IMG/VR virus record: IMGVR_UViG_3300038361_000164
Span: 1-64,000 of that record
Reading direction: 5' to 3' (one strand)
Length of the DNA: 64,000 nucleotides
Part shown: one piece after another, positions 18,977-64,000 of the stretch
Numbering within the stretch: position 1 is the first letter of the stretch
Layout: every line of letters starts with the position of its first letter
Translations under genes and position numbers: made by a program
The notes under the pieces: generated by a model
The model's database searches: none
The model's input: only the letters and a program-made list of their open reading frames with translations
Told to the model about the DNA's origin: nothing

Positions 18977-18988
18977 AATTAGGTGTGG

Positions 18989-19651
18989 TTATTTTTTAAT
19001 AGCTTCCACGTATAAAGACCTGTACGAGGCATTCGCCTCTGACGAATATGTTCCTTCAAATATAAAATGCTTTGATTGACTTATTTGATATTCCATTTTA
19101 GTAATGTTTGTTTTTTTAAACCCGGCAATTTGTAAATCCTTACATATGGTTTCATAATCCCACGCATTTTGATGGGCTAGCGCCTCTTTACCTAATAAAT
19201 GAGGCTGTCCTGTTGGAGATATAAAATCCTCTCTTAAACATTCAAAGATAGTATAGTCTTTATTATACTTAGTTTTTGCTCGTGCTGTTTCTTGTTTAAA
19301 AAGTTTATAGTTATGGTTTCTGTTAATATATTCTTTAATACTTCTTTCCACATCTGGAATCACTAGTCTTAGTATTCCTTCAGGGTTTAAAACTCTATAA
19401 ATCTCTTTAAATAATAAGGGTGATTTATATATACTAACATGTTCAAAAACATGAGACCCATACACACATTCTATTGAGTTATTTGGAAGAGGTATTTTTG
19501 TAAAATTTTTAAAATCTATTATTATATCTCCAAGTGTTGGGTCTACGTCTACCGTACACCAGGCGCTATCTGGTTTTTTCCAACCCCATCCTGGGCCAAA
19601 ATGTATTTTAGTCCAAATAGGGGGTTCATATTTTCGTTTTTTTAAGTCCAT
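18989..19651 (-). CDS. SAM-dependent methyltransferase (type 11-like)
   Basis: IHFGPG, SIECVYGSHVFEHV, EIYRVLNPEGILRLVIPD. Confidence 0.85.
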   Translation of the reverse strand: MDLKKRKYEPPIWTKIHFGPGWGWKKPDSAWCTVDVDPTLGDIIIDFKNFTKIPLPNNSIECVYGSHVFEHVSIYKSPLLFKEIYRVLNPEGILRLVIPDVERSIKEYINRNHNYKLFKQETARAKTKYNKDYTIFECLREDFISPTGQPHLLGKEALAHQNAWDYETICKDLQIAGFKKTNITKMEYQISQSKHFIFEGTYSSEANASYRSLYVEAIKK

Positions 19652-19662
19652 TTTTATAGTGG

Positions 19663-20436
19663 TTATAAAGCGTTAATACTATTAATTTCTTCTAGTACGT
19701 TTTCCGCAGTATCATCTTTTCAAATTCATTTTTGGTTCTCTGTAGCTATGTGTGGGTGTTCTCCTACACTCATTCCTGTTGTTCTCTTTAATCAACTTGC
19801 AGAACTGATCATAATTCCAGGTGTCGTTATTTTAAATACTCTATATGCAATATCAGGATTCATCATCATTAAAGCTCCACAGCCGTTTGATACTAACCAA
19901 TTCATCTTTGACTTCATATAAAAAGCCATTCTTAGTTCAACATTTATATTATATAAAGAAGGTTTATTTTCTAAATCGTCTATAATAAGATCATTTTTTT
20001 TATTAAATATTTTTCTTCACATTTTTACATTAGAATTTCTTGCTACTTCATACCGCCTTTCTCTAAGAGTGATGAGATTAGTAGTGTTATACACCATATC
20101 TAAAGCTGTTTGTCCAGCAGTTATGTGCTTAAAATTTTTATCAAAATAAACGTCCTTATCGATGGAAACAGTGTTATAGCCCAAACCAATACCCTTAGTT
20201 CCAATACCTACACCGCGGCAATTGGGCATCATCATAGCCAAAGGCATTAAAAGATGAGTTATTCTCCATTCTCAATCGTAATTAGCAGCTTTAGAATGCT
20301 TTTTAATGGAGGTAGTATTAATAGTAATATAAAAAGAATCTTCGTTATTTAATAATCTTTCTTGCTCACATAATGTGAGAAAGATAACAAAATCATAGGT
20401 AATAGGTTGATGCGCTAAATTATAACTAATGATCAT
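19663..20436 (-). CDS. Hypothetical protein in the glycan cluster, 257 aa (5 TGA=Trp)
   Basis: ATG 20436 (overlapping the upstream gene's end) to TAA 19663 is in one frame through 5 TGA and includes ORF 20017..20247. Confidence 0.75.
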
Positions 20437-21115
20437 ACTTATGTCCTTCTAGTCCAAAATTAATGAATGGATTTAATGATAATATGTTGCATCTATATTC
20501 TTCCGTCAATAACAATTTCAATACTTTTGTTGATTTTTCTATTTTAGATAACCAGACTTTGTAATGCTCTTCTTGATCATGTTCACCCCAGGCTATGCTT
20601 ATAGTTTCTTTAGTATGATATCCAGTAAAAAAACTTTCATCATCTAAAGTACCACAGTCGTGCCCGACAAGTATTATGTTCTTAGCACCCATATAAGCTG
20701 CTAAATGCATAGCTGTTGTAAAAGTGGTCCATGAAACTATTAAAGTATCCGATGCTCTTGGCAAAATATGTATTTTAAGTTCATTAAAATTATGGTTAAA
20801 CACAACAACATTATATAAATGATCATAATTATTTTTAATATGGTTTAAATTGATCGAGTTGTTTCCACCGTAACTTCCTTTTGAAATAAAATGTATTACA
20901 TTGGTCAAGGCTTTATCTTGCAGAATTTTATCCAATAATTGTGTTTCTTTTCTTACAAGATAAGTTGGATGTATTTTTTTATACGTTTGATTTACTCCAA
21001 TTAAAGTCTTGTTATTAAAAAAAGAATTGTCAACATAGTCACAGGATTTTCCAGCACCCATAACATAGATATCTTCGTCTTTATGTATATTTTTAAATTC
21101 TTTAAGAGCTCTCAT
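20426..21115 (-). CDS. DUF115/MptE-like (Maf-type) sugar-transfer-associated protein
   Basis: FKNIHKDEDIYVMGAGKS, LIGVN, AMHLAAYMGAKNIILVGHDC. Confidence 0.8.
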   Translation of the reverse strand: MRALKEFKNIHKDEDIYVMGAGKSCDYVDNSFFNNKTLIGVNQTYKKIHPTYLVRKETQLLDKILQDKALTNVIHFISKGSYGGNNSINLNHIKNNYDHLYNVVVFNHNFNELKIHILPRASDTLIVSWTTFTTAMHLAAYMGAKNIILVGHDCGTLDDESFFTGYHTKETISIAWGEHDQEEHYKVWLSKIEKSTKVLKLLLTEEYRCNILSLNPFINFGLEGHKYDH

Positions 21116-22146
21116 TATAGTTTTGTAAGAAATTCCTTTATTCTTTGAGCATCAGATTCAAAATTAACTACTTCGTTAAACTTAGCCTTTACTCTGGCAG
21201 ACCACTCTGGCCAGTGTGCTTCGGCATCGCGAATTTCGTTTACTATTTGTTCTGTGCTTTTACCATGCACATCTATCACAGTCTTTCCTGGAACAAATAA
21301 CATTTCAGGAGTTGAGCCTCGATGATAGGACATATTAACTATGACGGGCTTACCGGCCGCAAAAGCTTGATGTATATTATATCCATAGCCATCTCCCGAA
21401 GGTTTGACATGCCAAAGAAACCCAGTTTCACATAAATTTTGATCTAAGTCATCTGTAGCACCATCACGATTTCCTGCTCCATATATTTTTATATCCCAAT
21501 CAACTAAGCGCTGCTCTATTTCTGCAAGCTTAGGAGCGGTAGGAGAATAGTGTAATAAGTTTATAATACTCTTTGTATTGGTGTTTTCTGTATTGGAAAA
21601 ACGCTCTACTTCAAACTCTTGATGATAATGACACGTATTTGCATTTGGCCAAGTGGAATTACTTTTCTTAGCAGAAGTTAAATAGTTTTTAATTGGGTAA
21701 TTCCAATTGTCATTTCCAGCTTGAAAAATAAATTTGGCATTTGGCATATACTGTGAAATTAGTCGTTGGAAAAGATCTATATGACTGATATGCGAGGCTA
21801 AGACTACATCAAACTTCATTGTTTTAAAAGCTGGAAGTGTTATACCTCTATTAACTCTATTTCTTGGAGAAGTGCAAAAGTAAACTCCTGGAGTATCCGT
21901 AGCAATAGTTTCTGTGTGAACGTATTGTATTTTAGGAAGGGTTTCTCCGTGGATTGTTTTTAAGTTTTCTGTATTGAAATCTAAAAACTGTCTAGCAGTT
22001 CCCTCTGCTGGATATACATTCCAAAAGTTCTCATGCCACCATTCCATTCCTATAGGTCTGTATAATTCCCAACCAAGTCTTTCTTCAAAAAGTAAATGGA
22101 GAGAATGATATAAATCTTCGTGATGTAAGTCTGCTAAAATTTTCAT
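21115..22146 (-). CDS. Glycosyltransferase, GT-B/GT4-like
   Basis: C-terminal LWHVKPSGDGYGYNIHQAFAAGKPVI and LFVPGKT. No TGA. Confidence 0.75.
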   Translation of the reverse strand: MKILADLHHEDLYHSLHLLFEERLGWELYRPIGMEWWHENFWNVYPAEGTARQFLDFNTENLKTIHGETLPKIQYVHTETIATDTPGVYFCTSPRNRVNRGITLPAFKTMKFDVVLASHISHIDLFQRLISQYMPNAKFIFQAGNDNWNYPIKNYLTSAKKSNSTWPNANTCHYHQEFEVERFSNTENTNTKSIINLLHYSPTAPKLAEIEQRLVDWDIKIYGAGNRDGATDDLDQNLCETGFLWHVKPSGDGYGYNIHQAFAAGKPVIVNMSYHRGSTPEMLFVPGKTVIDVHGKSTEQIVNEIRDAEAHWPEWSARVKAKFNEVVNFESDAQRIKEFLTKL

Positions 22147-22148
22147 AA

Positions 22149-22997
22149 TTATCAATTATTGTTGGTTTCGTATCCTAGTTCAATTAATTCGTTGCCTGCG
22201 ATTTCTTTAAAAATATCAATTTGTTGGGGAGTTCAAGATTTTCAACGACTGCCCGCAGAGGCCTTTGCATTTCCAAAAGTACTGTGTTTATCTATATTAA
22301 TTACCTTGCAACTATCAAAGCTGGTAATTTTGGTCTGCACTTCTATTGCTTTTTGTTGCATACGTTTTTTATCCATAGGAATGTTAATAAAATTAAAAAG
22401 ACTTTCCGCAGTTTTATATCCATTTTTAACTCAATCCTCTAAAAACGTTATATTATAATTAGACATTCCTTTTCTACAATCCAAGGCAATTCTAGCTCTG
22501 TTTCTTTGTCCTTTGCAAAAAACTTTGAAATATTCTAAAGTCCTATATTCATGATTTGCTGTTTTTTTCTGAATAATAGATTCTATATGATTTCTAGGGT
22601 CCCGAGTATTAAGTACAAACTCCCAATCTCCGGGCAAAGAATTAAGTTCTGAAACTCCTCATCTAGTTAAAGTTTCTCCGTCGTAGGGATTTGGAACCAA
22701 CGCACTGTTAGTTTCTTCTCCTCACCAGTTTCAAACATAAGTATATCAAAATTGATATTCTAAGTTAGAATTTTGCTTTTCCCCTATTAACTTCAAGTGG
22801 TCGTGCGTTAAGTGCTGAACGGGACAGTGGATAGGAGATTCGGCCAATAAGGTACCTTGTGGCTCATAAATATGCTCATCTCCACGCTTTAAACTTTGTC
22901 TTTTTTTGTCTCATTCTTGAGGCTTTATATCTTGGATATGGTTTCTTACTAAATTAGAGCCACCCCTTATGTACATAAATAATAGTATATTTTTCAT
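22149..22997 (-). CDS. PAPS-dependent sulfotransferase, 282 aa (9 TGA=Trp)
   Basis: 5'-PSB-like YIRGGSNLV, 3'-PB-like LNTRDPRNHIES, FLED(W), and C-terminal R(W)KS(W)TPQQIDIFKEIAGNELIELGY. One frame from ATG 22997 to TAA 22149. Confidence 0.82.
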
Positions 22998-23009
22998 TTT
23001 ATATGTTGA

Positions 23010-23876
23010 TTATGCTGCCCAGTTACTTAAACATGTGTCTTTAGTAAGATCATTTCAAGCAGTTAGAGCTTTGTTTTTTAAATCCTCATCTATAGAATGT
23101 AAGTAAGTTTCTATGTGACTTGGAAATTGACCTGGATATAGTTCTACGTGTTTTAAAAAGAAACCTAACCGAGACAACTCTAAAGCAGAGTCCGTGTCAA
23201 AAGATTCTTTCTTTTCTAATTTGTAATAAAAACTCATTAAGTATCCAACGTGAAATCATCCCTCTTGGAAGTGAGATCATCCTTGTCTATAGTTAGCGCG
23301 ATGTGCGCCAAATTTTGCGTTATTATCCGCTAATCCTTTTATTCATTTTCTGCCATGTGATATTTCATCTGCGGTAAGAGAGTCCCACATTTCTTTCTTA
23401 ATTAATAAAAATGCGTTTTCCCAATGTGGGTTAGGCACAATTCACGGGTATACATTAGAAGGTTCGAATGTTTGATTTAGTACAGGGGCAATAGAACCGG
23501 TAAAAACATAAGATGGTGAGTAATGAGATTCTTGAATATGGTGACAAGAAAAATCATAACCTCCCTCCAAAAAGTCTTTTATAAATACATCTACAGTAGA
23601 AGGATCGCTTATAAAACAATCATTATCTATCATAAGTATTAATTCAAAGTCTCCTTGTAATCGATTTTTAAATCGAACCATTCCTTGGTCATAGGTTAAA
23701 TGCCCACTGTTCCAATATTCAGTATTTGGACCTGTATACGCTCCCCAAGCTTCTCTGCCTGTGTCTTGTATAATTACATTTGTATATCCAGATTTTCAAA
23801 GTCTGGAAATTGTGTCTTCAAAAAAGCTATTTTTTCTGTGATGATTGCTAATAATTAATACTTTAGTTTTATCCAT
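23010..23876 (-). CDS. GT-A/GT2-like glycosyltransferase, 288 aa (6 TGA=Trp)
   Basis: TAATG-coupled start. DxD-like ILMIDNDCF. Joins ORFs 23442..23681 and 23055..23237 in frame. Confidence 0.72.
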
Positions 23877-25027
23877 TATATTCGTACAGATGGTCTTGTT
23901 TTATTAAAAAATCTGGAAGCCTTATCCGCCATTTCAGTGCCAGAAACCAAATCCTGATGTAGATAGGTAGGATGATATTCTCCCGGAATGGGGTGCTTGT
24001 CGTAATAAATATCTATTTCTTTTAAGATATCTCGCCAACCAGCAGAATAATGCTTTCCGCGATAAGGCACCAACTCTCCCTGACCGCACCAAGCTACGGA
24101 AAAGTGGGCTGGCAATGTTTTAGGGTGTCCGTGCCTTTTTCCTAAAGTAGTCATTTTATCATCGGCGAACGCTCGTCCACAAAATTCTTCAGTAAATCCC
24201 TCTGTAGCATTAAACACAGTTCTGGACATAATATGAAATCCATGAAAATTTGGGATAAATTGTATCTTTGAAGATAAAAGACCTTCTACGTGTTGTTGAC
24301 AAAAATCTTTACTTTTATCTAAAAAATTTTCATCATCTAAACTAATCAATTGAGAGGATATGAAATTTGGAATATATACATCACACAAAGCACTTGGATA
24401 TCTTAGATAGTCCCTGACACAATGAACCGAATCATTGCTATAATTAGAGCCTCCTTTCCCGTCTTTTACTTCTTGCATATGTTCTAAGAGCCAATCTTTT
24501 TCTTGATTAGTAACTCTGGCAAATATGGCATGAGGAGAGCAATAATAATTATCTCCTCAAATTTTAACATACTCTTCAAGTTCTTTTAAGCTAAATAGAT
24601 ACAAAAAGTCCCCAGGAGTAATAATCAAAGTATCTCCGCTAGAAGCTTCCACTGCTAAATTATATAACAATCCAGAACTCATTCATAAAAAAGATCTAGA
24701 TATATCATATAAAGTCCCGTTTTTAAACTTTTCAACATTTTCTTTTAGCCCGTTTCTAAATTCTTCTTCGAAGATATTTTTTGTATCATAATGCACCATT
24801 AAACGATCTAAGTAGTCGGTAGTATCTTTAAAAGTTCTTGTAACTACTTTTAGGTTAGGTATCTCTATCTCTAGGTTTTTAAAGTGCTCGGCAGAGCCAT
24901 CTTCAACACGATCGTCGTGAGCTAAAACAATTTCAAACTCAACACCTTGGTTATGTTTTAATAAAGCTCGAATAAACATTTCAGTGTCTCATTTAGAATT
25001 GAGAGCACAACAGCATATACTTATCAT
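23876..25027 (-). CDS. GT-A/GT2-like glycosyltransferase, 383 aa (3 TGA=Trp)
   Basis: MISICCC, FEIVLAHDD..EDGS, YNLAVEASSGDTLIITPGD, GFTEEF...FADD. Joins ORFs 24683..24979 and 23876..24478. Confidence 0.78.
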
Positions 25028-25029
25028 TT

Positions 25030-26166
25030 TTATTGATGGTTAGAAAATAATTTTCGTAAAGTATTATAAATACGTTCTCTAAACTCTCCCACTACCCAAA
25101 ATCCGCTAGGAATGAATACAGGATGAATTTTAGAGTGTATTTGACATGTTCCGTTTGGAAAGCAATTGTGGATAGTATTATCAGGCCACATCGGAGTAGT
25201 TTGTATGTTAGCATCCTTAAACACTTGATTACATTTATCTATATTAATATTTGTGTTATTTAAAACAAATCCAAAAGTTCACCAACTTGGATTCGATTCC
25301 ACATCGGTTATTATTTGGTATTCACTAGGAATAACTGTTTTAAACAATGTAACATTTTCTCTAGAAACAGCTATAGATTGTTTAGCTAATTTTAGATTAG
25401 CAAGGCCTATACTTGCAGCAATGTCGTTCATATGAAACTTATATCCAGCTTCCTGTATAGAAGACGTCATTTGATGCTCCAACCGATCCATTCCTTTTGG
25501 AACTTTTCGATCTATACCAAATCATTTCAGCTTAATAGCTCGTTGATAATTATTTTCACAATTAATTGCAAGAGCTCCGCCGTCTCCGGTAGTAAGATGT
25601 TTAATTGATTGAAAAGAGAAACAAACATAATCCCCTCAATGTGAAATATGTTTATTTTTATAAAGAGTATCTACTCCGTGAGCAGCGTCAAGTATAAGAG
25701 GTATGTTTTTCTTTTTGCAGATTTTTACTAACTCATTCAATCTAAAAGGCACTACTCCACCTACCAAAACTAACATAACAATATTAAAAGTTTGTTTGTT
25801 AGCTTTTAAAGTCTTGATAATCTCATCACAGTCTAAACACAGAGTAGTATTGGATACTTTCCCTCAAATCACAGAATTACCTGTATTTGTTATAGCACAA
25901 TTGGTAGCAACCATGGTAAAAGGAGTTGTGAGTACGGAATTTTGCGAGGAGGACATAGCAAGTTTTAAGGCCATCATTAAGGAGCTTGTACATGAATTTG
26001 TACAAACAACTTTATCATGCTTAAATCAAGTATTTAATGCTTTTGTAAATTTTACAACTTTAGGACCTTCTCCTATCATTCCCGAATCTAACACATTTCC
26101 TACTTCATTTTTTGCTGTAGTAGACATTGCTACTTTAAACATTGGTATTGTGTTTGTGCTAGACAT
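25030..26166 (-). CDS. DegT/DnrJ/EryC1/StrS PLP-dependent sugar aminotransferase, 378 aa (5 TGA=Trp)
   Basis: SGMIGEGPKV, NSCTSSL, ILDAAHG, (W)GDYVCFSFQSIKHLTTGDGG with the PLP Lys, LK(W)FGIDR, GYKFHMNDIAASIG. Confidence 0.93.
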
Positions 26167-26744
26167 TATAACTCCTTTCTTGTGCACAAAGTTACAGCGT
26201 TGTGATTATTAGCCTCTACAACTGTATAATCTCAACAAGTATTAAACCATTTTTCTTTGAATATTATATTTCAGGGTTTATATTTATATTTTTTTTGCCA
26301 CTTATTGTGGATGCCGCCTTCTAAAATAAAGGCTTTATTTGAACTATTATCAAATAATTTTATGAGAGAAGGTAAATTATTATAATGATTGCAAACATCT
26401 ATATGAACTAATCCCAGATCTTCGGTTATAAGTTCTTTAAGTTTGTTTTCCGTTCCTTTGACTACTGCTCATTCACAAACTAAATTTGCTTTTTCTAAAT
26501 TAGAAATAGTTATTTTAAAATTGGCGTGTGTTTTTGCGTAAGGAGGCTCTATATATTCAGATTCAAAAGAATCTATAGTTATAATCTTACTTTTAGCTGC
26601 TAGTGCTTTCCCTATGAGAATAGCACTAGCACCCTGTTGTGTACCGATTTCAATTACTAATTTAGGATTAGTATTTTTGACAAAATCAATGATTTTAGTT
26701 TGTAAATGTGAGTTGGAATATGACGTGGTAAATACAGTAGACAT
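26166..26744 (-). CDS. Class I SAM-dependent methyltransferase, 192 aa (3 TGA=Trp)
   Basis: VIEIGTQQGASAI, ITIDSF, VHID. TAATG overlaps at both ends. Confidence 0.82.
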
Positions 26745-27166
26745 TAAAAGTCCTCCCGTAATTCTACCCAATTGTTCTCAAAGTCTTGTATAAATATATT
26801 AAACCAACCTTTTGGATTTTTATACTTATGTACTATGACATAAGCTGGTAAAACTTTTAAAAATTCCTCTCTACTACCCTTAGCACCTGTATGAAGACAA
26901 ACGTGATTTATGCCTTGTCTGTTGAATTGCCAAGTTCCGACATTTCCAGAGCCTTTGTGAAATTGATGAATTTCTATGTCAGGTGTGTCCGTGTCAGTGA
27001 GGGTATATCTGTGTATGGTTGCAACGTCATCTATATTAAACAAAGCTTTAGAAATTGTAGAATCAAGTTCGCTTTCCCAGATACAGGTATATCCTACAAT
27101 TTTACACCAAAATTCTTCAAATAAAAGTATGTTGTTTGTTATCCAACCAATGTGATCTATGTGCAT
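26744..27166 (-). CDS. VOC/glyoxalase superfamily protein
   Basis: IDHIGW, IEIHQF, GINHVCLH, FIQDFENNWVEL. Confidence 0.85.
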   Translation of the reverse strand: MHIDHIGWITNNILLFEEFWCKIVGYTCIWESELDSTISKALFNIDDVATIHRYTLTDTDTPDIEIHQFHKGSGNVGTWQFNRQGINHVCLHTGAKGSREEFLKVLPAYVIVHKYKNPKGWFNIFIQDFENNWVELREDF

Positions 27167-27178
27167 AATTTATTGCTC

Positions 27179-27844
27179 CTAGTTGTTTATCCATAAGGTT
27201 TGCTGTCCATCCAATAATAGCGTCCAACCGTGGTCAAAAAGCCACTCCCTAGCTAAACGAGGTTTTCCGCCCCCGGCTAAGTTGTTGTCATCTATTAATA
27301 TAACGGACTGATCTGTTAATTTATCGATTGCTGCTTCCAACTCCTTCAAACAATGTTCTTGACAAGGGTTAATAATATCACTATGAAATTGAACAATATT
27401 GTCATCAGAAAGAACGCAATCGAATCCACCAGGAAGATCTTCCATAGGATAATCAAAACTATCTAAATATAATAAATCTATTTGATGTTCGCAATTGTTT
27501 AAATATTCTACTGAGTCCATAAAAACATATTCTACATAATCATATTGCTTTGTAAATCTTTTTACTCGATTTAAATGCTCCTGAACATTATCAACTGTAA
27601 TTAACTTTCCACCTAATAGATTGATAGTTTCGGCAAAAAGAGCAGTAGACATGCCACCACCCCAATCATTTTCCTCACGCTGACATCCGGTTTCTACTAT
27701 TAGCTTCCCATTGCGTTGATAAAATAAGTTTAAAGCAGCTTTCATAGTAGGATACCTACCATCAAGCTGATTGTATTTATTAAAAAAATCTGTGTTTCTA
27801 ACGTATAAAAACTTTTTTATAGCGTCTGTAAGTACGTTTTCCAT
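27179..27844 (-). CDS. SAM-dependent methyltransferase (Methyltransf_24-like)
   Basis: IVETGC, LITVD, DSVEYL, IDLLYLDS, ILIDDN. Confidence 0.85.
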   Translation of the reverse strand: MENVLTDAIKKFLYVRNTDFFNKYNQLDGRYPTMKAALNLFYQRNGKLIVETGCQREENDWGGGMSTALFAETINLLGGKLITVDNVQEHLNRVKRFTKQYDYVEYVFMDSVEYLNNCEHQIDLLYLDSFDYPMEDLPGGFDCVLSDDNIVQFHSDIINPCQEHCLKELEAAIDKLTDQSVILIDDNNLAGGGKPRLAREWLFDHGWTLLLDGQQTLWINN

Positions 27845-28842
27845 TGTGTTTGTATGGTTTCTTGTCCAAAATATTGTAAAGCAGTAGCTCTACCATTTGC
27901 TCCTATTTCTCTAGCTAAGTCTATATCATTTAAAAGCAAGTCACAATATTTTCGTAATTGATCCACATCGTCGCTAATAAATCCGTTAATACTGTTTCGT
28001 ATAATTGTATCTATTTCATACAATCCACTAACTCCTAGGTATTGAGCATTTCCATGCACAGGTCCCAAAGCTATAACTGGAATCCCGGTCATTAAAGCTT
28101 CAATAAAGTTTAAAGTATAGCTCGCAGGATGTGTGCCTGTATAAAAATAAGCTCTATTATTTCTCATTTCAGCTTTTAATTGCTCAAAGGAAACTTTACC
28201 AGGAGAGAATTCTAAATGCTCATTTCCAGGTCCAAACAATATTCTTGGTACACTTTTAGTAACTTCATCATAAATAGGAAAATTACAATGAGGTGTACGC
28301 TGTTGCATTGATTGATTAAAAGTAACAATTCTTTTATTTTTACCATTCCAGTTTTTATATTCTTCTGGATCTTTGTAAAAACGAATTAGTGCATCACCTC
28401 CTAAGTATCCAGGAATATTCATTTCGTTTGGAGAATACCTTACGATTTTTAATCCCTGCTCTCTAAAAGGTCTAAGCTCTGCTTCAGTGTTAGTAATAGA
28501 TTGTCCTATGGTTCTCCATATCACAACTTTATGCTTCATAGCTTCCCAGTTTCCTGAAATCCATCTAGGAATGTGCATTACAATAACACAATCAAACATA
28601 TCTACAAATTCTTTAGTTAATCTATCTTTCCCATCTACCGCTCCTTGACAAAGCGTATGATACATGTCTAAATGCTTTTGCTCATACTCAATGTTTAAAA
28701 GTCCGGGACGTAAAGTAGCGTCTCCAGGATTTTTTGGCTCTACATACGCGCCAGGAGAAAAGACATAATGTCCCATCCCAGTTAAAAGTTTTACTTCGTC
28801 ATACTCTAGAATACTGTGACAACTTAAATATAATATTTTCAT
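27817..28842 (-). CDS. GT4-like glycosyltransferase
   Basis: NFIEALMTGIPVI and IRNSINGFISDD. Confidence 0.85.
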   Translation of the reverse strand: MKILYLSCHSILEYDEVKLLTGMGHYVFSPGAYVEPKNPGDATLRPGLLNIEYEQKHLDMYHTLCQGAVDGKDRLTKEFVDMFDCVIVMHIPRWISGNWEAMKHKVVIWRTIGQSITNTEAELRPFREQGLKIVRYSPNEMNIPGYLGGDALIRFYKDPEEYKNWNGKNKRIVTFNQSMQQRTPHCNFPIYDEVTKSVPRILFGPGNEHLEFSPGKVSFEQLKAEMRNNRAYFYTGTHPASYTLNFIEALMTGIPVIALGPVHGNAQYLGVSGLYEIDTIIRNSINGFISDDVDQLRKYCDLLLNDIDLAREIGANGRATALQYFGQETIQTQWKTYLQTL

Positions 28843-29813
28843 TACGACTGTAACCTCGCTAGATCGGAGTCTACCATTTTTATTACAAGTTCTTTAAAAC
28901 TAACTTTAGGAGACCATCCAAGTTCCTGTCTTGCAAAAGCAGAATCGCCTCTTAAAACATTTACTTCTGCAGGACGCATAAATCTTGGATCTTGTTTTAT
29001 ACAATGACGCCAGGTTTCATACCCAATGTGTGTAAACGCGACATCTAAGAAATCTTTAATTGAGTGGGATTTTCCAGTAGCTATTACAAAATCTGTAGGC
29101 TCCTTTTGCTGTAACATCGCCCACATTGCTTTTACATATTCAGGTGCATATCCCCAATCACGTCTAGCTTCAAGATTGCCTAAAGTTATGTGATTTTGAA
29201 TACCCAATCTTATCTTTGCAACACCGTCTGATATTTTTCTAGTAACAAATTCTAATCCACGTCTTTCTGATTCGTGATTAAATAAAATGCCACAACAGTT
29301 ATACATTCCATACGATTCTCTATAATTTACTGTAATATGATGACCGTAAAGTTTAGAAACCCCATAAGGCGATCTTGGACTAAAGGGAGTAGTTTCATCC
29401 ATTAACTCTGTTGTTTGGTTTCCAAACATTTCTGATGAGCTAGCTTGGTAAAACTTTATTTTTTTATTGGTATCAAACTCTCTAATCGCTTCCAACATTC
29501 TTAACACACCTAATCCTGTAACATCACTTGTCTGTTCTGGAGTGTTCCAGCTTTCACCAACAAAAGATTGAGAGGCTAAGTTGTATATTTCGTCGGGATC
29601 GCATACCTTTAAAGCTCTTAGGAGTGAATTTTGGTCTGTCAAATCACCTTGTATAAAAGTAATTTTTTCTTCCAAATGTGCGGTATTTGTTCTATTTTTT
29701 GTGGAAGCTCTACGTTCTAAACCAAAAACTTCATAATTTTTGGTTAATAAAAAATCAGCTAAATGGCTTCCATCCATTCCATTTATGCCTGTAATTAAAG
29801 CACGTTTACTCAT
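28842..29813 (-). CDS. gmd: GDP-mannose 4,6-dehydratase
   Basis: ALITGINGMDGSHLA, GDLTD, EIYNLASQS, FYQASSSEMFG, SPYGVSKL, NHESERRG, RDWGYA. Confidence 0.95.
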   Translation of the reverse strand: MSKRALITGINGMDGSHLADFLLTKNYEVFGLERRASTKNRTNTAHLEEKITFIQGDLTDQNSLLRALKVCDPDEIYNLASQSFVGESWNTPEQTSDVTGLGVLRMLEAIREFDTNKKIKFYQASSSEMFGNQTTELMDETTPFSPRSPYGVSKLYGHHITVNYRESYGMYNCCGILFNHESERRGLEFVTRKISDGVAKIRLGIQNHITLGNLEARRDWGYAPEYVKAMWAMLQQKEPTDFVIATGKSHSIKDFLDVAFTHIGYETWRHCIKQDPRFMRPAEVNVLRGDSAFARQELGWSPKVSFKELVIKMVDSDLARLQS

Positions 29814-31428
29814 TCGTATTGTTGGTTAAGGCTACCCATTGTTCTTTAATGGAATCAATGTGTACTTGTTGTTTAATAATTTCTTTGCCCAATAAAGCTT
29901 GAGCCTTATAATAAGCATAATTTTCTTTTAATTCAAGCAATTGTTTAGCTGCATGTGCCACATCCGGTTCGTACTGTTCTCCAACTTTAATTTCTCTCGT
30001 AATATTGCCAGAGTATCTAGCTGTCGAAGCTTCATGGCTGTTAACCCATAAAATACCTGGAACATCTATTAAATCAAGATGTGCTGTGTTTCTACTCAAT
30101 ATTACAGGTATTCCGCAAAGCAAAGCTTGTCTTGGTGTGACACTATATCCTTCCCCTGCGGAGATAAATATATAAGCACTTAAATTTTTCCACCAAGCTA
30201 AATAGTCTTCAAAAATGAGAGTTTCATTTTGAAAACTAATATTTTTTGAATCTAGAGCAAGTATGCTTTCTAAATGTTCTACCATTTCTGGAGTGTTAAC
30301 AAAATCCCTGGAGTGTATAGCAAGAAAATCATTTTCGCTTTTCATTACATTAAAGCTCTCAATAATTTTATCTACTTTTTTACGTTCCCATAGTCCGCCA
30401 GAATAACCAAAAGTTATTTTGTCCGTAGGTGGGTTATTTTCTAAAATTGAATAGTGTGCTATGTGCTCTAACTTGTCGATAGTGGCTTTTGGATATTCTT
30501 TTTGTAAATGTTCATGTAGCCAACTATTAGTTATAACTGTATGGTCGAACATTTCAATCAATGGTTGCAATAAATCAACTCCAGTACTTTCCCACATAAG
30601 GTAAAAATAGGATTCTATGTTATATTTGTTTTTTAAATCTTCAAGCACACGTCTTGTATGCGTAAATATGTTTTCTGCAATGTCTATGCCGGAAACATGT
30701 ATAAATTTAGCATTTTTGTATTTCTCAGGATTTTCTGCATGTGCATTTTCTAAAGTCAAATATAACTTTAACCATTCAAAATCTTTGATATGTCTGTTTA
30801 AATTCTCTTGGGAAAAATCATCTATAGTTTGTAGAAATCTGAAATGCTGTCCAATACGATCATATGCTCTGTAAAATGACACGTTTTTAAAATTACGAAA
30901 AACGTTATCATATAAATTAAACATATGTGCTCCCAGACCATCTTCTCTTAAATAAAAACCATACATAATAATTGGAGTATCCAACCCGTCCTTAACAGGC
31001 AATAGGTGGTCGATATTAATATTTTTAATATGTTCCATTATATCCAATTCACAGGTTTTAACTTCAAATCCTTTTATCTTTAGTTGTTCAAATTTAGAGG
31101 GAGTTTCTTCAAGTGCAGCCATTAATCCTTGAGGTTTTACCAAATCTTTAGGATATCTTGGGGAAATAACGGCATGGACAATTCCATGAAATTGTGTTTC
31201 TTCGTATAAAGAAGTCACAGTTGTAAATTCTAGTTCAGTTTTATTAGCTGATAAAAAAATTTCTGTGGTTATGGGGGAAATAATGCGGTTGCCCCAAACT
31301 AATGTTAGAGTAGTGTTTATATCGTATGGAGTGTTATATGTGACCCTTACTTTATATATGCCGCTTGAGTTAACGTTTTTAACGTCGTGTAGTGTAACAA
31401 TTTTTTGTTGTGGGGTTTCTCTTATCAT
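29806..31428 (-). CDS. GT4-like glycosyltransferase with N-terminal extension (540 aa)
   Basis: FGYSGGLWERKKVD and FISAGEGYSVTPRQALLCGIPVILS. Confidence 0.8.
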   Translation of the reverse strand: MIRETPQQKIVTLHDVKNVNSSGIYKVRVTYNTPYDINTTLTLVWGNRIISPITTEIFLSANKTELEFTTVTSLYEETQFHGIVHAVISPRYPKDLVKPQGLMAALEETPSKFEQLKIKGFEVKTCELDIMEHIKNINIDHLLPVKDGLDTPIIMYGFYLREDGLGAHMFNLYDNVFRNFKNVSFYRAYDRIGQHFRFLQTIDDFSQENLNRHIKDFEWLKLYLTLENAHAENPEKYKNAKFIHVSGIDIAENIFTHTRRVLEDLKNKYNIESYFYLMWESTGVDLLQPLIEMFDHTVITNSWLHEHLQKEYPKATIDKLEHIAHYSILENNPPTDKITFGYSGGLWERKKVDKIIESFNVMKSENDFLAIHSRDFVNTPEMVEHLESILALDSKNISFQNETLIFEDYLAWWKNLSAYIFISAGEGYSVTPRQALLCGIPVILSRNTAHLDLIDVPGILWVNSHEASTARYSGNITREIKVGEQYEPDVAHAAKQLLELKENYAYYKAQALLGKEIIKQQVHIDSIKEQWVALTNNTNE

Positions 31429-38580: not shown

Positions 38581-38582
38581 AA

Positions 38583-38927
38583 TTATTCAAGTGGTAATTT
38601 GTCAATTCCAAAAGCTTTGCCCATCCAAGTTGCAACTAGTCCAAGACTAAAGTATGGGTTTCGTATTTTATGCTCATCACATTTCGTTGTGACATGCACT
38701 TTGGGCCAATGCTCTTCAGCGTATTCCGCCATTACTTTATTGTGTACTCCTTTGGGACCTTTAGAACCATTTCGTCTACAATATCCTCTACGCTCTTTCT
38801 GTCTAGCGTAAAAAAAATGTTTACAGTTTCCGCAACATTCCATTATCTGTAGTCCGGGAAATTGCTCTGTAATTACTCCCGGACTATTTTCGACCTCATC
38901 GAAGTCGTAGTTTATTTTATCGGCCAT
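38583..38927 (-). CDS. Cys-rich hypothetical protein (CCGNCKHF...GYC...CDEH)
   Basis: Putative Zn-binding residues; translationally coupled ORF. Confidence 0.7.
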   Translation of the reverse strand: MADKINYDFDEVENSPGVITEQFPGLQIMECCGNCKHFFYARQKERRGYCRRNGSKGPKGVHNKVMAEYAEEHWPKVHVTTKCDEHKIRNPYFSLGLVATWMGKAFGIDKLPLE

Positions 38928-41742: not shown

Positions 41743-42101
41743 GAGAAGCAGTTTTATTAAGATATTCTGAAGAAGAAAATAATGCCAGATATTTAGAAAC
41801 GTTAATAAATCTTTTTGGGATCATGTCCCAGAGAGGGGAAGAACCTGATACTGAATATTTAGAAAAGTTATTAGAACAGTATCAAACAATAATGTTAGGA
41901 AAATCTGAATCCAAAACAGATAAAATAGAATCTAAAAAGGAATCTGCTGATGCAAATCTTTTAACTGATTTTAAAGGTTTTCAAGAGAATATTAAAGGTA
42001 AGACCTTTTCCTTTAAAAAACTAAAAGATACTGTAGGGAAAAAAGAATTTGATTCCACAGATATTCGAAAACTATCAGAAAAGTATTTAGGAGATAAATA
42101 A
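41296..42101 (+). CDS. Tail assembly chaperone G-T fusion via -1 frameshift at T TTT TTC (41664-41670)
   Basis: The -1 frame is open from the heptamer to TAA 42101, with no ATG until 41823. Confidence 0.75.
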
Positions 42102-63024: not shown

Positions 63025-64000
63025 ATGCGATTTCATATACTTGGATTGCCACATACAAAAATAAGAAAAGATCTTCCTTGAGCCTTTTGTGCTTATACAC
63101 AAAAAATTCATAACATGTGTAAAATGTTATATGATAATAATCATGAAGTTTTTTTATATGCACATACAGGAAGTACAGCTCCTTGTACGAAGTTAATAGA
63201 TTTTTATCCTAATAACATGTTTGACGAATGTTTTGGAAAAATCACTTCTGACACCCGAACAGCTTTTAATACAGAAGTACCGACAAACATTTGAGCGCGA
63301 GATAACTTCGCCAAAGAAGTAAATAAACGTTTAATAAAAGATGACATAATTTTAGCACCTTTTGGGGATATGTATGAAGGAAGTACTTTCAAAAACTGCA
63401 AAGCACCTGTAATAGAAATGGCAATCGGATATCCCAATTGTCATTTTGCATATTATAAAGTGTGGGAAAGTTATTATATTAAAAATCACATAGATGGTCG
63501 CAATCATAATGAAAAACCCAACTGATCTGAAACTGTAATACATGGTTATATTGATCCAGAGGAATATATTTATAATCCAAACCCAAGAGATTATTTTCTA
63601 TACATGGCAAGAGTGGAGGACGATTATGCACATTCAAAAGGACTGCATTTAGCATTAGAATTACAAGCTAAGTTAGGCTTTAAACTAATTATAGCTGGAC
63701 CAGGTCCTGGGGAAAAATATGTTAGAAATAATGTGACTTACATAGGCCCAGTTTCAGAAACCGAGAAAGCGTTATTATTATCAAATGCTAAAGGATTATT
63801 TTCTTTAAGCCTGTACCCAGAACCTTTTGGATATATAGTAATTGAAAGTTTAATATCTGGCACTCCTGTAATTACTACAGATCATGGAGCTTTTCCAGAA
63901 ACAGTAATAGAAGGTAAAACAGGTTTTAGAGCAATTTGTTGAGATGATCTAGTCAACGCAGTGGAAAATATCAATAATATATCTAGATACGAATGTAGAG
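63025..64000 (+). CDS. GT4 family glycosyltransferase (3' truncated; 4 TGA=Trp)
   Basis: MRFHILGLPHT, LIIAGPG, YPEPFGYIVIESLISGTPVITTDHGAFPETV. Confidence 0.9.

What the first reader, a model, noticed from the sequence alone, without database searches (positions are those of the whole stretch)
18989..31428. Self-contained glycan pathway: GDP-amino-deoxysugar synthesis, transfer, methylation and sulfation
Seen: Gmd, a DegT-family aminotransferase, five GT-like genes, three methyltransferases, a sulfotransferase, a DUF115-like protein and a VOC protein. Established: Gmd plus a DegT-family enzyme makes GDP-perosamine-type 4-amino-4,6-dideoxy sugars from GDP-mannose. Inference: the phage builds a decorated glycan for its virion or the host surface. 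The late-type (TGA) coding of key steps favours virion glycosylation, similar in concept to giant-virus fibril glycans.
Basis: partly seen in the sequence, partly recalled or inferred. Interest (0 to 1): 0.7.

Follow-up and report, generated by a model that had tools for sequence, protein, structure and literature searches.

The report
Phage glycan operon with split coding
A 210-kb marine phage carries a 14-gene operon of sugar-building, sugar-transferring, methylating and probably sulfating enzymes, most likely to coat its own particle with a decorated glycan; six of the 14 genes can only be read if the stop codon TGA means tryptophan, as in the phage's virion genes.

Summary
Window 18989-31428 (minus strand) is a gap-free array of 14 genes:
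- Gmd
- a DegT-family aminotransferase with its PLP lysine
- six glycosyltransferase-fold proteins, not five
- a weak DUF115-like protein
- three SAM methyltransferases
- a VOC protein
- a probable sulfotransferase

Six genes (g2, g5-g9) are open only with TGA=Trp, which conserved Trp columns in standard-code homologues confirm. Trp codon use is sharply split: 31 TGA/17 TGG in those six genes, 0/47 in the other eight, 3/70 in flanking replication genes and 79/67 in late virion genes.

The operon is not self-contained. It has no ManC or PAPS genes, no membrane or export proteins, and sits in the replication module. A canonical ThyA argues against sugar-modified DNA.

Virion glycosylation is favoured, mostly by evidence from outside the interval:
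- Three late, TGA-bearing glycosyltransferase paralogues directly precede a 1803-aa collagen-like fibre gene.
- In 34 of 80 related viral loci, the g12/g4 glycosyltransferase cassette lies within 10 kb of the major head gene.

GDP-perosamine as the sugar is plausible (about 50%), not shown. This is a new variant of virus-encoded glycosylation; the acceptor is inferred.

The parts
18989..19651 (-). g1: class I SAM methyltransferase (Methyltransf_11). No TGA, 5 TGG. O- versus N-methylation not resolved.
   Evidence: PF08241 32 bits, above the 21.2 cut-off; phrog_22502 methyltransferase. PDB hits are only weak N-methyltransferases. No homologue in related loci.
19663..20436 (-). g2: compact GT-B glycosyltransferase-like protein, GT9 (heptosyltransferase)-like fold. 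5 in-frame TGA (codons 55, 140, 215, 237, 239).
   Evidence: No Pfam, PHROG or NCBIfam hit. 530 homologues in the representative library. AF2 pLDDT 92.8. VIA-align Z 12.3 to 3TOV, 12.1 to WaaF/WaaC, 9.0 to TibC. Codons 140 and 239 are near-invariant Trp.
20426..21115 (-). g3: DUF115/MptE-like (Maf- or sialyltransferase-like) protein. Weakly supported. No TGA.
   Evidence: PF01973 25.7 bits, below the 34.6 cut-off; phrog_4603 'alpha-2,3-sialyltransferase' 1.6e-6 over 38 residues. PDB sequence search uninformative.
21115..22155 (-). g4: GT-B glycosyltransferase, GT4-like. Core gene of the cassette. No TGA, 10 TGG. The likely true start is the ATG at 22146.
   Evidence: No HMM hit. 104 homologues, all unnamed. 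AF2 pLDDT 93.2. Z 20.7 to BshA, 20.6 to HepE, 20.4 to TarM, also PglA and PimA. Co-occurs with g12 in 61 of 80 IMG/VR loci.
22149..22997 (-). g5: probable PAPS-dependent sulfotransferase. 9 in-frame TGA, the densest in the genome; the first is at codon 29.
   Evidence: Atlas feature search 0.97, with all ten best named hits Sulfotransfer_1/3. The L003 homologue hits PF00685 at E 0.006. A two-sequence profile has the OLS/CurM sulfotransferase domains among its best PDB hits (4GOX first, E 0.04; 4GBM E 0.8), with unrelated cytochrome c-552 chains between them. Motifs RGGSN and RDPRNHIES are read. PF13469 itself finds nothing.
23010..23876 (-). g6: GT-A (GT2-like) glycosyltransferase with a DND motif. 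6 TGA.
   Evidence: Atlas structure matches at TM 0.5-0.58 to PF00535 clusters. Homologues in L002, L003 and L004.
23876..25027 (-). g7: GT-A (GT2-like) glycosyltransferase. 3 TGA (codons 13, 115, 157).
   Evidence: 35 homologues at 32-49% identity, five of them carrying PF00535. The profile gives weak GT-A hits in PDB: DPMS 0.03, NleB/SseK 0.12. Trp 115 is invariant.
25030..26187 (-). g8: DegT/DnrJ/EryC1 PLP-dependent sugar aminotransferase, probably acting at C4. 5 TGA. The likely start is the ATG at 26166.
   Evidence: PF01041 189.8 bits. PDB: AtmS13 1.6e-44, CalS13 2e-30, perosamine synthases 3.5e-13, ColD 2e-11; the lysine in SFQSIKHL aligns with SFQALKHL of AtmS13. Below every NCBIfam equivalog cut-off.
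26166..26771 (-). g9: SAM methyltransferase (Methyltransf_24, CmcI / sugar O-methyltransferase-like). 3 TGA. The likely start is the ATG at 26744.
   Evidence: PF13578 27.3 bits, above the 26.3 cut-off. Syntenic with VOC and DegT in L002, L003, L004 and L020.
26744..27166 (-). g10: VOC (glyoxalase-fold) protein. No TGA, 6 TGG. Inferred role: epimerase or isomerase on the NDP-4-keto sugar.
   Evidence: PF13669 24.9 bits, below the 27 cut-off. The L002 homologue carries PF00903. 41-49% identical homologues always sit next to MT24 and DegT.
27179..27844 (-). g11: SAM methyltransferase (Methyltransf_24). Semi-core gene. No TGA.
   Evidence: PF13578 31 bits. Homologues in L002-L006 and in 19 of 80 IMG/VR loci.
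27817..28842 (-). g12: GT-B glycosyltransferase, GT4-like. Anchor gene of a widespread phage glycosyltransferase cassette. No TGA.
   Evidence: PF00534 E 0.0013. All 17 hits up to E 0.7 of a five-sequence profile in PDB are GT4 enzymes (TarM 6e-4, PglA, BshA). At least 148 relatives in IMG/VR. None in GenBank phages.
28842..29813 (-). g13: GDP-mannose 4,6-dehydratase (Gmd). No TGA.
   Evidence: PF16363 414.6 bits over the full length. PDB 1RPN 2.3e-108. TIGR01472 407 bits against 101 bits for dTDP-glucose dehydratase. The GINGMDGS and YGVSK motifs are read.
29806..31428 (-). g14: first gene of the array. It has a C-terminal GT4-like domain (about residues 335-537) and an N-terminal region of about 330 residues with unknown function. 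No TGA.
   Evidence: PF13692 27.9 bits, above the 27 cut-off; phrog_2170 glycosyltransferase 2e-13. A 100% identical IMG/VR fragment exists, L001.
63025..64000 (+). 5' part of the first of three tandem late-strand GT4-like paralogues. In the genome these are 63025-64698, 64691-66622 and 67420-68505, with 7, 6 and 3 TGA. They directly precede the 1803-aa collagen-like fibre gene at 68512-73923, which is the candidate acceptor.
   Evidence: BLASTP to the L042 glycosyltransferase: 33-36% identity, down to 8e-73. PF00534 59.7 and 77.2 bits; PF01391 Collagen 453 bits. phrog_3408 4e-69 and tail-fibre PHROGs. 348 GXY triplets with Thr in 92 Y positions.

Best explanation
The interval is a cytoplasmic glycan-building operon of a seawater jumbo phage, used to glycosylate the phage's own virion proteins.

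Shown:
- Gmd, a lysine-bearing DegT aminotransferase, six soluble glycosyltransferase-fold proteins, three methyltransferases, a VOC protein and a probable sulfotransferase sit in one gap-free co-oriented array.
- Six of the genes need TGA=Trp decoding at the density seen in virion genes. The other eight avoid TGA completely.

Inferred mechanism:
1. Host GDP-mannose is converted by Gmd to GDP-4-keto-6-deoxymannose.
2. Part of this is aminated by the DegT, possibly after epimerisation by the VOC protein, to a GDP-4-amino-4,6-dideoxyhexose.
3. GT4-, GT2- and GT9-like transferases assemble an oligosaccharide directly on a protein acceptor in the cytoplasm.
4. Methyltransferases and a PAPS-dependent sulfotransferase decorate the glycan.
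5. The TGA-free enzymes (Gmd, g4, g12, g14, g11, g10, g3, g1) can be made at any time. The aminotransferase, two GT2-like enzymes, the GT9-like enzyme, one methyltransferase and the sulfotransferase appear only once TGA is decoded, together with virion proteins.

Candidate acceptors are the 1803-aa collagen-like fibre, which has 92 Gly-X-Thr triplets and three dedicated late glycosyltransferases, and/or head proteins.
For: - Gene identities.
- TGA=Trp. The sequence is identical in independent seawater runs.
- Trp codon split: six genes 31 TGA/17 TGG; eight genes 0/47; flanking minus-strand genes 3/70; late block 79/67. Fisher p is 2e-13, 6e-13 and 0.24. The first TGA lies at codon 13-92 in each of the six genes, so unsuppressed products would be truncated.
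- No hydrophobic segment typical of a membrane span in any of the 14 proteins.
- Three TGA-bearing glycosyltransferase paralogues lie immediately upstream of a collagen-repeat fibre gene inside the tail-fibre block.
- In L042 the order is TerL, portal, minor head, major head, GT, GT, g12 homologue, three unknowns, g4 homologue, collagen-like protein, 601-aa protein, late-GT homologue. L037 is similar.
- 34 of 80 IMG/VR loci with a g12 homologue have that major head gene within 10 kb.
- The genome's only thymidylate-synthase homologue is a canonical ThyA.
Against: - The operon lies between RecU/RNR and DUF669/AAA_24/exonuclease/primase on the early strand, with no room for its own promoter. Large relatives keep it next to primase-helicase genes.
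- Eight genes have no late-type coding.
- Five large relatives with the cassette (three at least 97% complete) have neither a collagen protein nor the late glycosyltransferase. The collagen fibre therefore cannot be the general acceptor.
- GT4 and GT9 families commonly act on lipid-linked envelope glycans without membrane helices of their own.
- No tRNA(UCA) was found, so how and when TGA is decoded is unknown.
- No glycan has been observed. The sugar's identity and its nucleotide carrier are unproven.
Confidence: 0.52

Rival explanations
1. Host envelope remodelling. The enzymes act as peripheral membrane proteins on host lipid-linked or LPS/capsule/glycoprotein acceptors. They change the infected cell's surface, for example to block superinfection, release progeny or avoid grazers, and rely on host flippases and ligases.
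For: - The operon sits in the early/replication module, and eight of its genes are translatable without recoding.
- GT4-like folds match PglA, WbnH, PimA and WaaG; the GT9-like fold matches LPS heptosyltransferases.
- This is the usual published reading of multi-glycosyltransferase islands in marine cyanomyoviruses (PMC12801897).
Against: - No initiating phosphoglycosyltransferase, flippase, polymerase, ligase or transporter, and no membrane protein, is in the array.
- Key steps are coded like virion genes and would appear late, which leaves little time to rebuild a surface.
- Homologous cassettes sit within 10 kb of the major head gene in 34 of 80 loci.
- Dedicated glycosyltransferases flank a virion fibre gene.
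Confidence: 0.25
2. DNA hypermodification. The sugars are attached to modified bases of phage DNA to evade restriction, as in T-even glucosyl-hmC or arabinosyl-hmC phages.
For: - The operon is embedded among replication and recombination genes here and in large relatives.
- T4 alpha-glucosyltransferase appears among the GT-B matches of g4 at Z 17.9, though 20 other entries score higher.
- Phage glycosyltransferases are often assumed to glucosylate DNA (PMC12619734).
Against: - The genome's only thymidylate-synthase-family gene passes the thymidylate synthase equivalog cut-offs (NF002497 327.7/327; TIGR03284 310.8/108). No hydroxymethylase is evident.
- From general knowledge, no known DNA glycan uses GDP-sugars, amino-dideoxy sugars, O-methylation or sulfation.
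- Six or seven transferases point to an oligosaccharide.
- In smaller relatives the cassette is in the head module.
Confidence: 0.06
3. The operon is a mosaic of two unrelated pathways. A TGA-free Gmd/GT4 core makes a 6-deoxyhexose glycan. A separately acquired TGA-rich block (g5-g9, plus g2) works on a host dTDP- or UDP-4-keto sugar. On this reading Gmd and DegT are not a pathway pair and no perosamine is made. This rival concerns the chemistry and is compatible with any acceptor.
For: - The VOC-MT24-DegT triad sits with an RmlA-like and RmlB-like pair in L003, L004 and L019. Gmd occurs with the core in L005, L006, L015, L017 and L025 without any DegT.
- The DegT is closest to AtmS13/CalS13, not to perosamine synthases.
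- TGA-rich genes form a contiguous 4.6-kb block.
Against: - This phage has no RmlA/RmlB of its own, and Gmd is its only 4,6-dehydratase.
- L003 has two dehydratases and two DegT genes. That leaves its g8-type DegT free to pair with Gmd.
- GC and GC3 are uniform across TGA-rich and TGA-free genes.
- The VOC gene belongs to the triad by synteny but is TGA-free.
Confidence: 0.35

Closest known systems
Mycobacteriophage virion glycosylation (Freeman et al. 2023, PMC10527164, as cited in PMC12619734; details from general knowledge)
   Same: Phage-encoded soluble glycosyltransferases modify capsid and tail proteins in the cytoplasm. The glycosyltransferase genes lie beside structural genes, as do this phage's three late glycosyltransferases and the g12/g4 cassette in L042-type relatives.
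   Different: Here the main cluster is far larger. It includes sugar-nucleotide tailoring (Gmd, DegT, VOC), three methyltransferases and a sulfotransferase. It lies in the replication module and is split by genetic code. No sequence relatives of g12 or g4 exist in GenBank phages.
Giant-virus glycosylation machinery: Mimivirus fibril glycans with methylated viosamine; chlorovirus PBCV-1 Gmd and glycosyltransferase-methyltransferase A064R (general knowledge)
   Same: A virus-encoded, host-independent pathway. It combines 4,6-dehydratase and aminotransferase chemistry giving 4-amino-4,6-dideoxy sugars, O-methylation, several transferases, and fibres or capsid proteins as acceptors.
   Different: This is a bacterial virus of 210 kb. 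A GDP route is likely, rather than the UDP route of Mimivirus. A sulfotransferase is present. Translation is gated by stop-codon recoding.
Bacillus anthracis BclA: collagen-like exosporium filament O-glycosylated on Gly-X-Thr repeats with rhamnose and anthrose, a 2-O-methyl-4-acylamino-4,6-dideoxyglucose (general knowledge)
   Same: A collagen-like surface fibre rich in Gly-X-Thr, 92 such triplets here. It is encoded alongside glycosyltransferases, a DegT aminotransferase, 6-deoxy sugar synthesis and methylation.
   Different: No sequence orthology was tested. The phage fibre also has Cys in 88 Y positions. The link between the fibre and the 14-gene operon is contextual only.
GDP-perosamine pathway: Gmd plus Per/RfbE (Vibrio cholerae O1, E. 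coli O157, Caulobacter; PDB 3DR4, 3BN1)
   Same: A true Gmd and a lysine-bearing DegT-family aminotransferase are encoded in one operon.
   Different: The aminotransferase is not a Per orthologue: 52 bits to Per against 155 bits to AtmS13. No N-acyl- or formyltransferase is present. In relatives Gmd and this DegT type are not consistently linked.
Cell-wall/LPS-like gene islands of marine cyanomyoviruses (S-SCSM2R with 13 glycosyltransferases, P-SSM2, S-SSM7; PMC12801897) and the core glycosyltransferases of aquatic 'moraphages' (PMC12619734)
   Same: Large aquatic phages with many glycosyltransferases and NDP-sugar enzymes of untested function.
   Different: This genome lacks the moraphage markers LysRS and DnaK. 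The cluster adds aminotransferase, sulfotransferase and methyltransferases. It shows the TGA split and the link to a collagen fibre and the head module.
Stop-codon-recoded phages (TAG=Gln, TGA=Trp; Borges et al. 2022 as summarised in PMC11210395; Peters et al. 2022, PMC9523058)
   Same: In-frame TGA at conserved Trp positions, concentrated in late or virion genes and nearly absent from replication genes.
   Different: This is a seawater phage rather than a gut phage. No tRNA(UCA) was found, although a tRNA(CUA) is present. Recoding cuts through one metabolic operon on the early strand.

Membership tests
GDP-mannose 4,6-dehydratase (Gmd) | Full-length match to the Gmd models, clearly above other NDP-sugar 4,6-dehydratases | tested here: met
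   PF16363 414.6 bits over positions 1-332 of 332. PDB Gmd 1RPN 2.3e-108. TIGR01472 407 bits against 101 bits for dTDP-glucose dehydratase, although 8 bits under the equivalog cut-off of 415.
GDP-mannose 4,6-dehydratase (Gmd) | SDR cofactor-binding glycine motif and catalytic Tyr-x-x-x-Lys | tested here: met
   GINGMDGS near the N-terminus and YGVSK are read directly in the translation.
DegT/DnrJ/EryC1 sugar aminotransferases | Family HMM match, and a PLP-binding lysine (not the histidine of ColD-type dehydratases) | tested here: met
   PF01041 189.8 bits. The lysine in SFQSIKHL aligns with the lysine in SFQALKHL of AtmS13.
GDP-perosamine synthase (Per/RfbE) | Orthology to characterised perosamine synthases | tested here: not met
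   3DR7/3BN1 score 52 bits (E 3.5e-13), against 155 bits for AtmS13 and 109 bits for CalS13. No NCBIfam equivalog cut-off is reached.
GDP-perosamine synthase (Per/RfbE) | Activity on GDP-4-keto-6-deoxymannose | not testable with these tools
   Needs an enzyme assay. Context is ambiguous, with an RmlA/RmlB pair beside the triad in relatives.
PAPS-dependent sulfotransferases | Match to a sulfotransferase family model at its threshold | tested here: inconclusive
   No Pfam hit for g5. The homologue hits PF00685 at E 0.006. The profile has CurM/OLS sulfotransferase domains among its best PDB hits, at E 0.04-0.8. Atlas feature score 0.97 with consistent families.
PAPS-dependent sulfotransferases | 5'-phosphosulfate and 3'-phosphate binding motifs | tested here: met
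   An N-terminal hydrophobic strand followed by RGGSN, and RDPRNHIES, conserved as RDPRSHIES in the L003 homologue. Motif assignment is from general knowledge.
Phage virion-glycosylation systems | Glycosyltransferase genes embedded among virion structural genes | tested here: inconclusive
   Met for the three late paralogues next to the collagen fibre gene, and for the g12/g4 cassette in 34 of 80 related loci. Not met for the 14-gene operon itself, which lies in the replication module.
Phage virion-glycosylation systems | Glycan detected on capsid, tail or fibre proteins | not testable with these tools
   There is no isolate and no proteomic data.
Wzx/Wzy- or ABC-dependent O-antigen/capsule clusters | Initiating phosphoglycosyltransferase, flippase or transporter, and polymerase or ligase (membrane proteins) | tested here: not met
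   None of the 14 proteins has a membrane-span-like segment (maximum 19-residue hydropathy 1.88, inside the DegT core) or a match to such families.
Glycosylated-DNA phages (T-even type) | dCMP or dUMP hydroxymethylase providing the base to be glycosylated | tested here: not met
   The single thymidylate-synthase-family gene passes the thymidylate synthase equivalog cut-offs.
Code-4-like recoded phages | In-frame TGA at conserved Trp positions | tested here: met
   Long-ORF coverage rises from 0.67 to 0.98 when TGA is read.
Code-4-like recoded phages | Phage-encoded suppressor tRNA with anticodon UCA | tested here: not met
   ARAGORN at default and relaxed settings, and Rfam scans of 88-134 kb, find 27 tRNAs including tRNA(CUA) and tRNA-Trp(CCA) but no credible tRNA(UCA).

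The most novel reading that the evidence does not exclude
Stop-codon recoding splits one metabolic operon into two translation stages. The TGA-free enzymes (Gmd and the GT4-like core) work from early infection. The aminotransferase, the GT2- and GT9-like transferases, one methyltransferase and the sulfotransferase are made only after the switch to TGA=Trp. A sulfated, methylated amino-deoxy-sugar glycan is therefore finished only when its acceptor, a Cys/Thr-rich collagen-like virion fibre, is present. If true, this would be the first sulfated glycan on a phage particle. It would also be the first case of recoding used to time steps within a biosynthetic pathway.
Probability: 0.2. Interest if true: 0.85.

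Novelty: new variant of a known kind. Interest (0 to 1): 0.62.

Why it matters
Virion glycans change how phages are recognised by hosts, grazers, antibodies and mucus. Direct evidence in phages so far comes mainly from mycobacteriophages.

This locus would extend virus-encoded glycosylation to marine jumbo phages, with chemistry previously associated with giant viruses and spore filaments: amino-dideoxy sugar, methylation, probable sulfation.

It also uncovers a two-glycosyltransferase cassette (g12/g4). The cassette is present in at least 148 IMG/VR loci, is absent from all GenBank phage records, and often lies beside the major head gene.

Finally, it gives a clean natural test of the idea that stop-codon recoding times protein production. 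Within one transcript-sized array, six genes use TGA like virion genes and eight avoid it completely.

Tried and rejected
- Nucleotide search of the interval against GenBank phages: no match. tblastn of g12 and g4 against the same collection: no match.
- Single-protein IMG/VR scans with g4 and g14 found nothing, or only a 100% identical 7-kb fragment.
- Word-indexed homologue search with g5 found nothing.
- Single-sequence PDB searches of g1, g2, g3, g5 and g11 were uninformative.
- Foldseek of the g2 model gave only E above 0.03. The exhaustive structural aligner was needed.
- The sigma-70 promoter scan gave chance-level counts, 62 against 60 expected. Terminator-like sites on both strands were twice the expectation but none marks a gene boundary. 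This gives no evidence for internal promoters.
- Hunt for a tRNA(UCA). A relaxed-threshold 'tRNA-SeC(tca)' at 106498-106588 is AT-rich, poorly paired and not seen by Rfam, so it was rejected. tRNA-like elements at 111607-111677, 114627-114702 and 118579-118649 do not carry UCA.
- Moraphage membership was rejected: no LysRS and no DnaK.
- A search for Ser/Thr-rich acceptor candidates by composition gave nothing striking.
- The idea that the collagen fibre is the universal acceptor of the g12/g4 cassette was rejected. Five large relatives have no collagen protein and no late glycosyltransferase.
- TAG read-through joining g11 and g10 (same frame, 12-nt spacer) was considered, because a tRNA(CUA) exists. 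It was dropped because 12-nt in-frame spacers are common in this genome.
- The Borges et al. 2022 paper is not held in the library, so its model is cited second-hand.
- No complex prediction was run.

Full report
**Setting.** The window is the first 64 kb of a single-contig viral record of 210,263 bp, estimated 99% complete. GC content is about 34%. The stretch 22149-27166 occurs, essentially letter for letter, in at least nine seawater metagenomes. Two independent DNA runs laid on it show no differing letter. Short identical contigs occur in seawater metatranscriptomes, which is compatible with transcription but does not prove it. No related record exists in GenBank phages at the nucleotide level.

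**Genetic code.** Under table 11 the region 19.6-26.8 kb falls into fragments. With TGA read through it becomes six intact, tightly abutting genes. Genome-wide, coverage by long ORFs rises from 0.67 to 0.98 when TGA is read. That TGA means tryptophan is shown by the sequences themselves:
- g7 codon 115 (TGA) aligns with an invariant Trp in 35 homologues whose genes are open under the standard code.
- g2 codons 140 and 239 fall in near-invariant Trp columns.
- g5 codons 92 and 113 match Trp in its L003 homologue.
- One DegT TGA matches Trp in AtmS13.

The genome encodes 27 tRNAs and a tmRNA at 104-131 kb. These include a tRNA(CUA) and a tRNA-Trp(CCA), but I found no credible tRNA(UCA). How TGA is decoded remains open.

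**Anatomy of the interval.** There are fourteen genes, all on the minus strand. Junctions are 1-nt overlaps, short overlaps or spacers of up to 12 nt, and several annotated GTG/TTG starts are probably ATGs a few codons downstream. In transcription order:
- g14: a C-terminal GT4-like domain (PF13692 at threshold; phrog_2170 2e-13) behind an N-terminal region of about 330 residues with unknown function.
- g13: a true Gmd (PF16363 414.6 bits; PDB 1RPN 2e-108; TIGR01472 407 bits against 101 for dTDP-glucose dehydratase).
- g12: GT4-like. All hits up to E 0.7 of a five-sequence profile in PDB are GT4 enzymes, with TarM at 6e-4.
- g11: Methyltransf_24.
- g10: a VOC/glyoxalase-fold protein.
- g9: Methyltransf_24.
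- g8: DegT aminotransferase (PF01041 1e-55, PLP lysine present).
- g7 and g6: two GT-A/GT2-like proteins.
- g5: a probable sulfotransferase.
- g4: a GT-B of GT4 type. No HMM sees it, but an AF2 model (pLDDT 93) matches BshA, HepE, TarM, PglA and PimA at Z about 20.
- g3: a weak DUF115/MptE-like protein.
- g2: a compact GT-B resembling GT9 heptosyltransferases (pLDDT 93; Z 12 to 3TOV/WaaC/WaaF, 9 to the protein heptosyltransferase TibC).
- g1: Methyltransf_11.

These calls rest. The sulfotransferase and DUF115 calls rest on weak but concordant evidence. None of the 14 proteins has a membrane-span-like segment.

**What is not there.** The genome has no NTP_transferase-family enzyme (ManC/RmlA) and no APS kinase. 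GDP-mannose and PAPS must therefore come from the host, and the pathway is not self-contained. There is no initiating phosphoglycosyltransferase, flippase, polymerase or transporter. The single thymidylate-synthase-family gene passes the thymidylate synthase equivalog cut-offs. I see no route to a hydroxymethyl-pyrimidine that could carry sugars on DNA.

**The coding split.** This is the most striking measurable feature. I counted Trp codons in each gene set.

| Gene set | TGA | TGG | TGA share |
|---|---|---|---|
| g2, g5-g9 | 31 | 17 | 65% |
| Other eight operon genes | 0 | 47 | 0% |
| Twenty flanking minus-strand replication genes | 3 | 70 | 4% |
| 85-155 kb minus-strand block | 11 | 209 | 5% |
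| Plus-strand virion block, 42-85 kb | 79 | 67 | 54% |

The six genes differ from their neighbours and from their operon mates (Fisher p 2e-13 and 6e-13). They do not differ from the virion genes (p 0.24). On the whole minus strand they are the only plausible genes with three or more TGA. The first TGA lies at codon 13-92 in each, so without suppression only truncated products can form. GC and GC3 are uniform across both sets, which gives no compositional sign of recent import. TGA-rich genes form a 4.6-kb block (g5-g9) plus g2. The VOC gene, which belongs with g8 and g9 by synteny, is TGA-free. It does not hold for Gmd or for four of the six transferases.

**Relatives.** Homologues of g7 and g4 lie on uncultivated phage contigs of 95-252 kb that use the standard code in this region.
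- Across five such loci, a core of Gmd, g12, g11 and g4 recurs in L003-L006.
- A VOC-MT24-DegT-g7(-g6) module recurs in L002-L004.
- An IMG/VR scan with a g12 profile found at least 148 loci. Of the best 80, g4 is present within 10 kb in 61, g11 in 19, Gmd in 6-7, a DegT in 6 and a g5-like gene in 5.

The locus is therefore a hypervariable glycan island anchored by the g12/g4 glycosyltransferase pair. The combination seen here is one of many.

**Chemistry.** The DegT is a lysine-type aminotransferase. It is closest to the C4 aminotransferases AtmS13 and CalS13 (155 and 109 bits), and far from perosamine synthases (52 bits) and ColD.

Evidence that loosens the Gmd-DegT link:
- In L003, L004 and L019 the triad sits beside an RmlA-like thymidylyltransferase and an RmlB-like dTDP-glucose dehydratase.
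- Gmd occurs without any DegT in L005, L006, L015, L017 and L025.

Evidence for the link:
- L003 has two dehydratases and two DegT genes, which leaves its g8-type DegT (43% identical to g8) free to pair with Gmd.
- This phage has Gmd as its only 4,6-dehydratase.

I put a GDP-4-amino-4,6-dideoxyhexose (perosamine type) at about one half. The main alternative is use of a host dTDP- or UDP-4-keto sugar. The VOC protein's constant position next to the methyltransferase and the DegT suggests an epimerase or isomerase acting on the 4-keto intermediate. This is inference only.

**Acceptor.** Evidence comes from outside the given interval.
- The last gene of the window (63025 onward) and the next genes downstream are three paralogous GT4-like transferases: 63025-64698, 64691-66622 (with an extra weak GT8-like domain) and 67420-68505. 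All carry TGA and sit inside the tail-fibre block.
- They directly precede a 1803-aa collagen-repeat protein (PF01391 453 bits). It has 348 Gly-X-Y triplets, with Thr in 92, Cys in 88 and Gln in 77 Y positions. From general knowledge, Gly-X-Thr collagen-like filaments are classic O-glycosylation substrates.
- In the smaller phage contig L042 the order is TerL, portal, minor head protein, major head protein, two glycosyltransferases, g12 homologue, three unknowns, g4 homologue, collagen-like protein, a 601-aa protein and a homologue of the late glycosyltransferases. L037 is similar.
- In 34 of the 80 loci, an L042-type major head gene lies within 10 kb of the g12 homologue.

These contexts tie the cassette to virion morphogenesis. 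Against a simple story, five large relatives carrying the cassette (three at least 97% complete) have neither a collagen protein nor the late glycosyltransferase. The collagen-plus-late-glycosyltransferase unit is therefore a separate module, and the cassette's general acceptor must be something else, perhaps head proteins. In this phage and its large relatives the island lies next to replication genes, not structural ones.

**Verdict.** The most likely reading (about 0.5) is cytoplasmic glycosylation of virion proteins. The glycan would be built from a Gmd-derived 6-deoxy or amino-dideoxy sugar, then methylated and probably sulfated, and finished only when TGA is decoded. Host-envelope remodelling remains a serious rival (about 0.25) and DNA glycosylation is unlikely (about 0.06). 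Whether Gmd and the DegT form one pathway is a separate open question.

The closest known systems are:
- mycobacteriophage virion glycosylation;
- the giant-virus fibril and capsid glycosylation machineries;
- the BclA/anthrose system of Bacillus spores;
- the unexplained glycosyltransferase islands of marine cyanomyoviruses and moraphages (PMC12801897, PMC12619734);
- stop-codon-recoded phages (PMC11210395, PMC9523058).

It is a new variant of a known kind. The novelty lies in the enzyme combination, in the widespread uncharacterised g12/g4 cassette, and in recoding that cuts through one operon.

Noticed in passing
G000 68512-73923 (outside the window, + strand): The 1803-aa collagen-like tail-fibre protein has two runs of 172 and 176 Gly-X-Y triplets. 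Cys occupies the Y position in 88 triplets (GSC, GPC, GLC, GVC), next to 92 Thr and 77 Gln. This is an unusual, potentially disulfide-laced collagen.
   Followed up: partly
G000 104-131 kb (tRNA block); 115365-115439; 109296-109371: There are 27 tRNAs plus a tmRNA (tag GKTQFALAA). A tRNA with anticodon CUA (TAG suppressor type) is present although TAG behaves as a stop. No tRNA(UCA) is present although TGA is read as Trp. The decoding mechanism is unexplained.
   Followed up: partly
G000 110.9-111.7 kb (L007 6990-7100, 7397-7496, 7611-7678): Sub-threshold matches to Y RNA-like YrlA (42-43 bits against a gathering score of 69). Nearby is a GC-rich tRNA-like element whose anticodon arm has a 6-nt loop. 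A CCA-adding enzyme gene with 2 TGA lies at window 37093-38628.
   Followed up: no
G000 200957-205477 (+ strand): A 1506-aa, TGA-free protein has a GT4-like domain at about residues 111-396. This domain is related to the two glycosyltransferases that precede g12 in L042 and L037. It is a further glycosyltransferase domain outside both clusters.
   Followed up: no
L006 11065-13062: In a related 116-kb phage contig the Gmd gene encodes 665 aa. A LAGLIDADG-type insertion splits the dehydratase domain, so this is probably an intein in Gmd. L004 has intein-containing primase and HNH genes inside its glycan island.
   Followed up: no
L005 572-1573; L006 3837-4835: Actin-like genes (Pfam Volactin) lie just upstream of the glycan island in two large relatives.
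   Followed up: no
G000 189928-192603: The large terminase is 891 aa with 14 TGA. The terminase match covers only residues 513-883, and the N-terminal 500 residues are unexplained apart from a weak thymidylate-synthase PHROG hit.
   Followed up: no
window 42001-44000: Local GC rises to 0.42, against about 0.34 elsewhere, at the start of the plus-strand late block, within the gene of a 1001-aa protein with no family match.
   Followed up: no
G000 205-210 kb: The last 5 kb gives only ORFs with extreme TGA density (for example 74 TGA in 483 codons). The region is probably non-coding or read in another way. No terminal repeat was detected.
   Followed up: no
window 18977-18988, 22998-23009, 27167-27178 and elsewhere: Exactly 12-nt in-frame spacers recur between consecutive genes across the genome. 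This suggests a fixed ribosome-binding spacer and translational coupling.
   Followed up: partly
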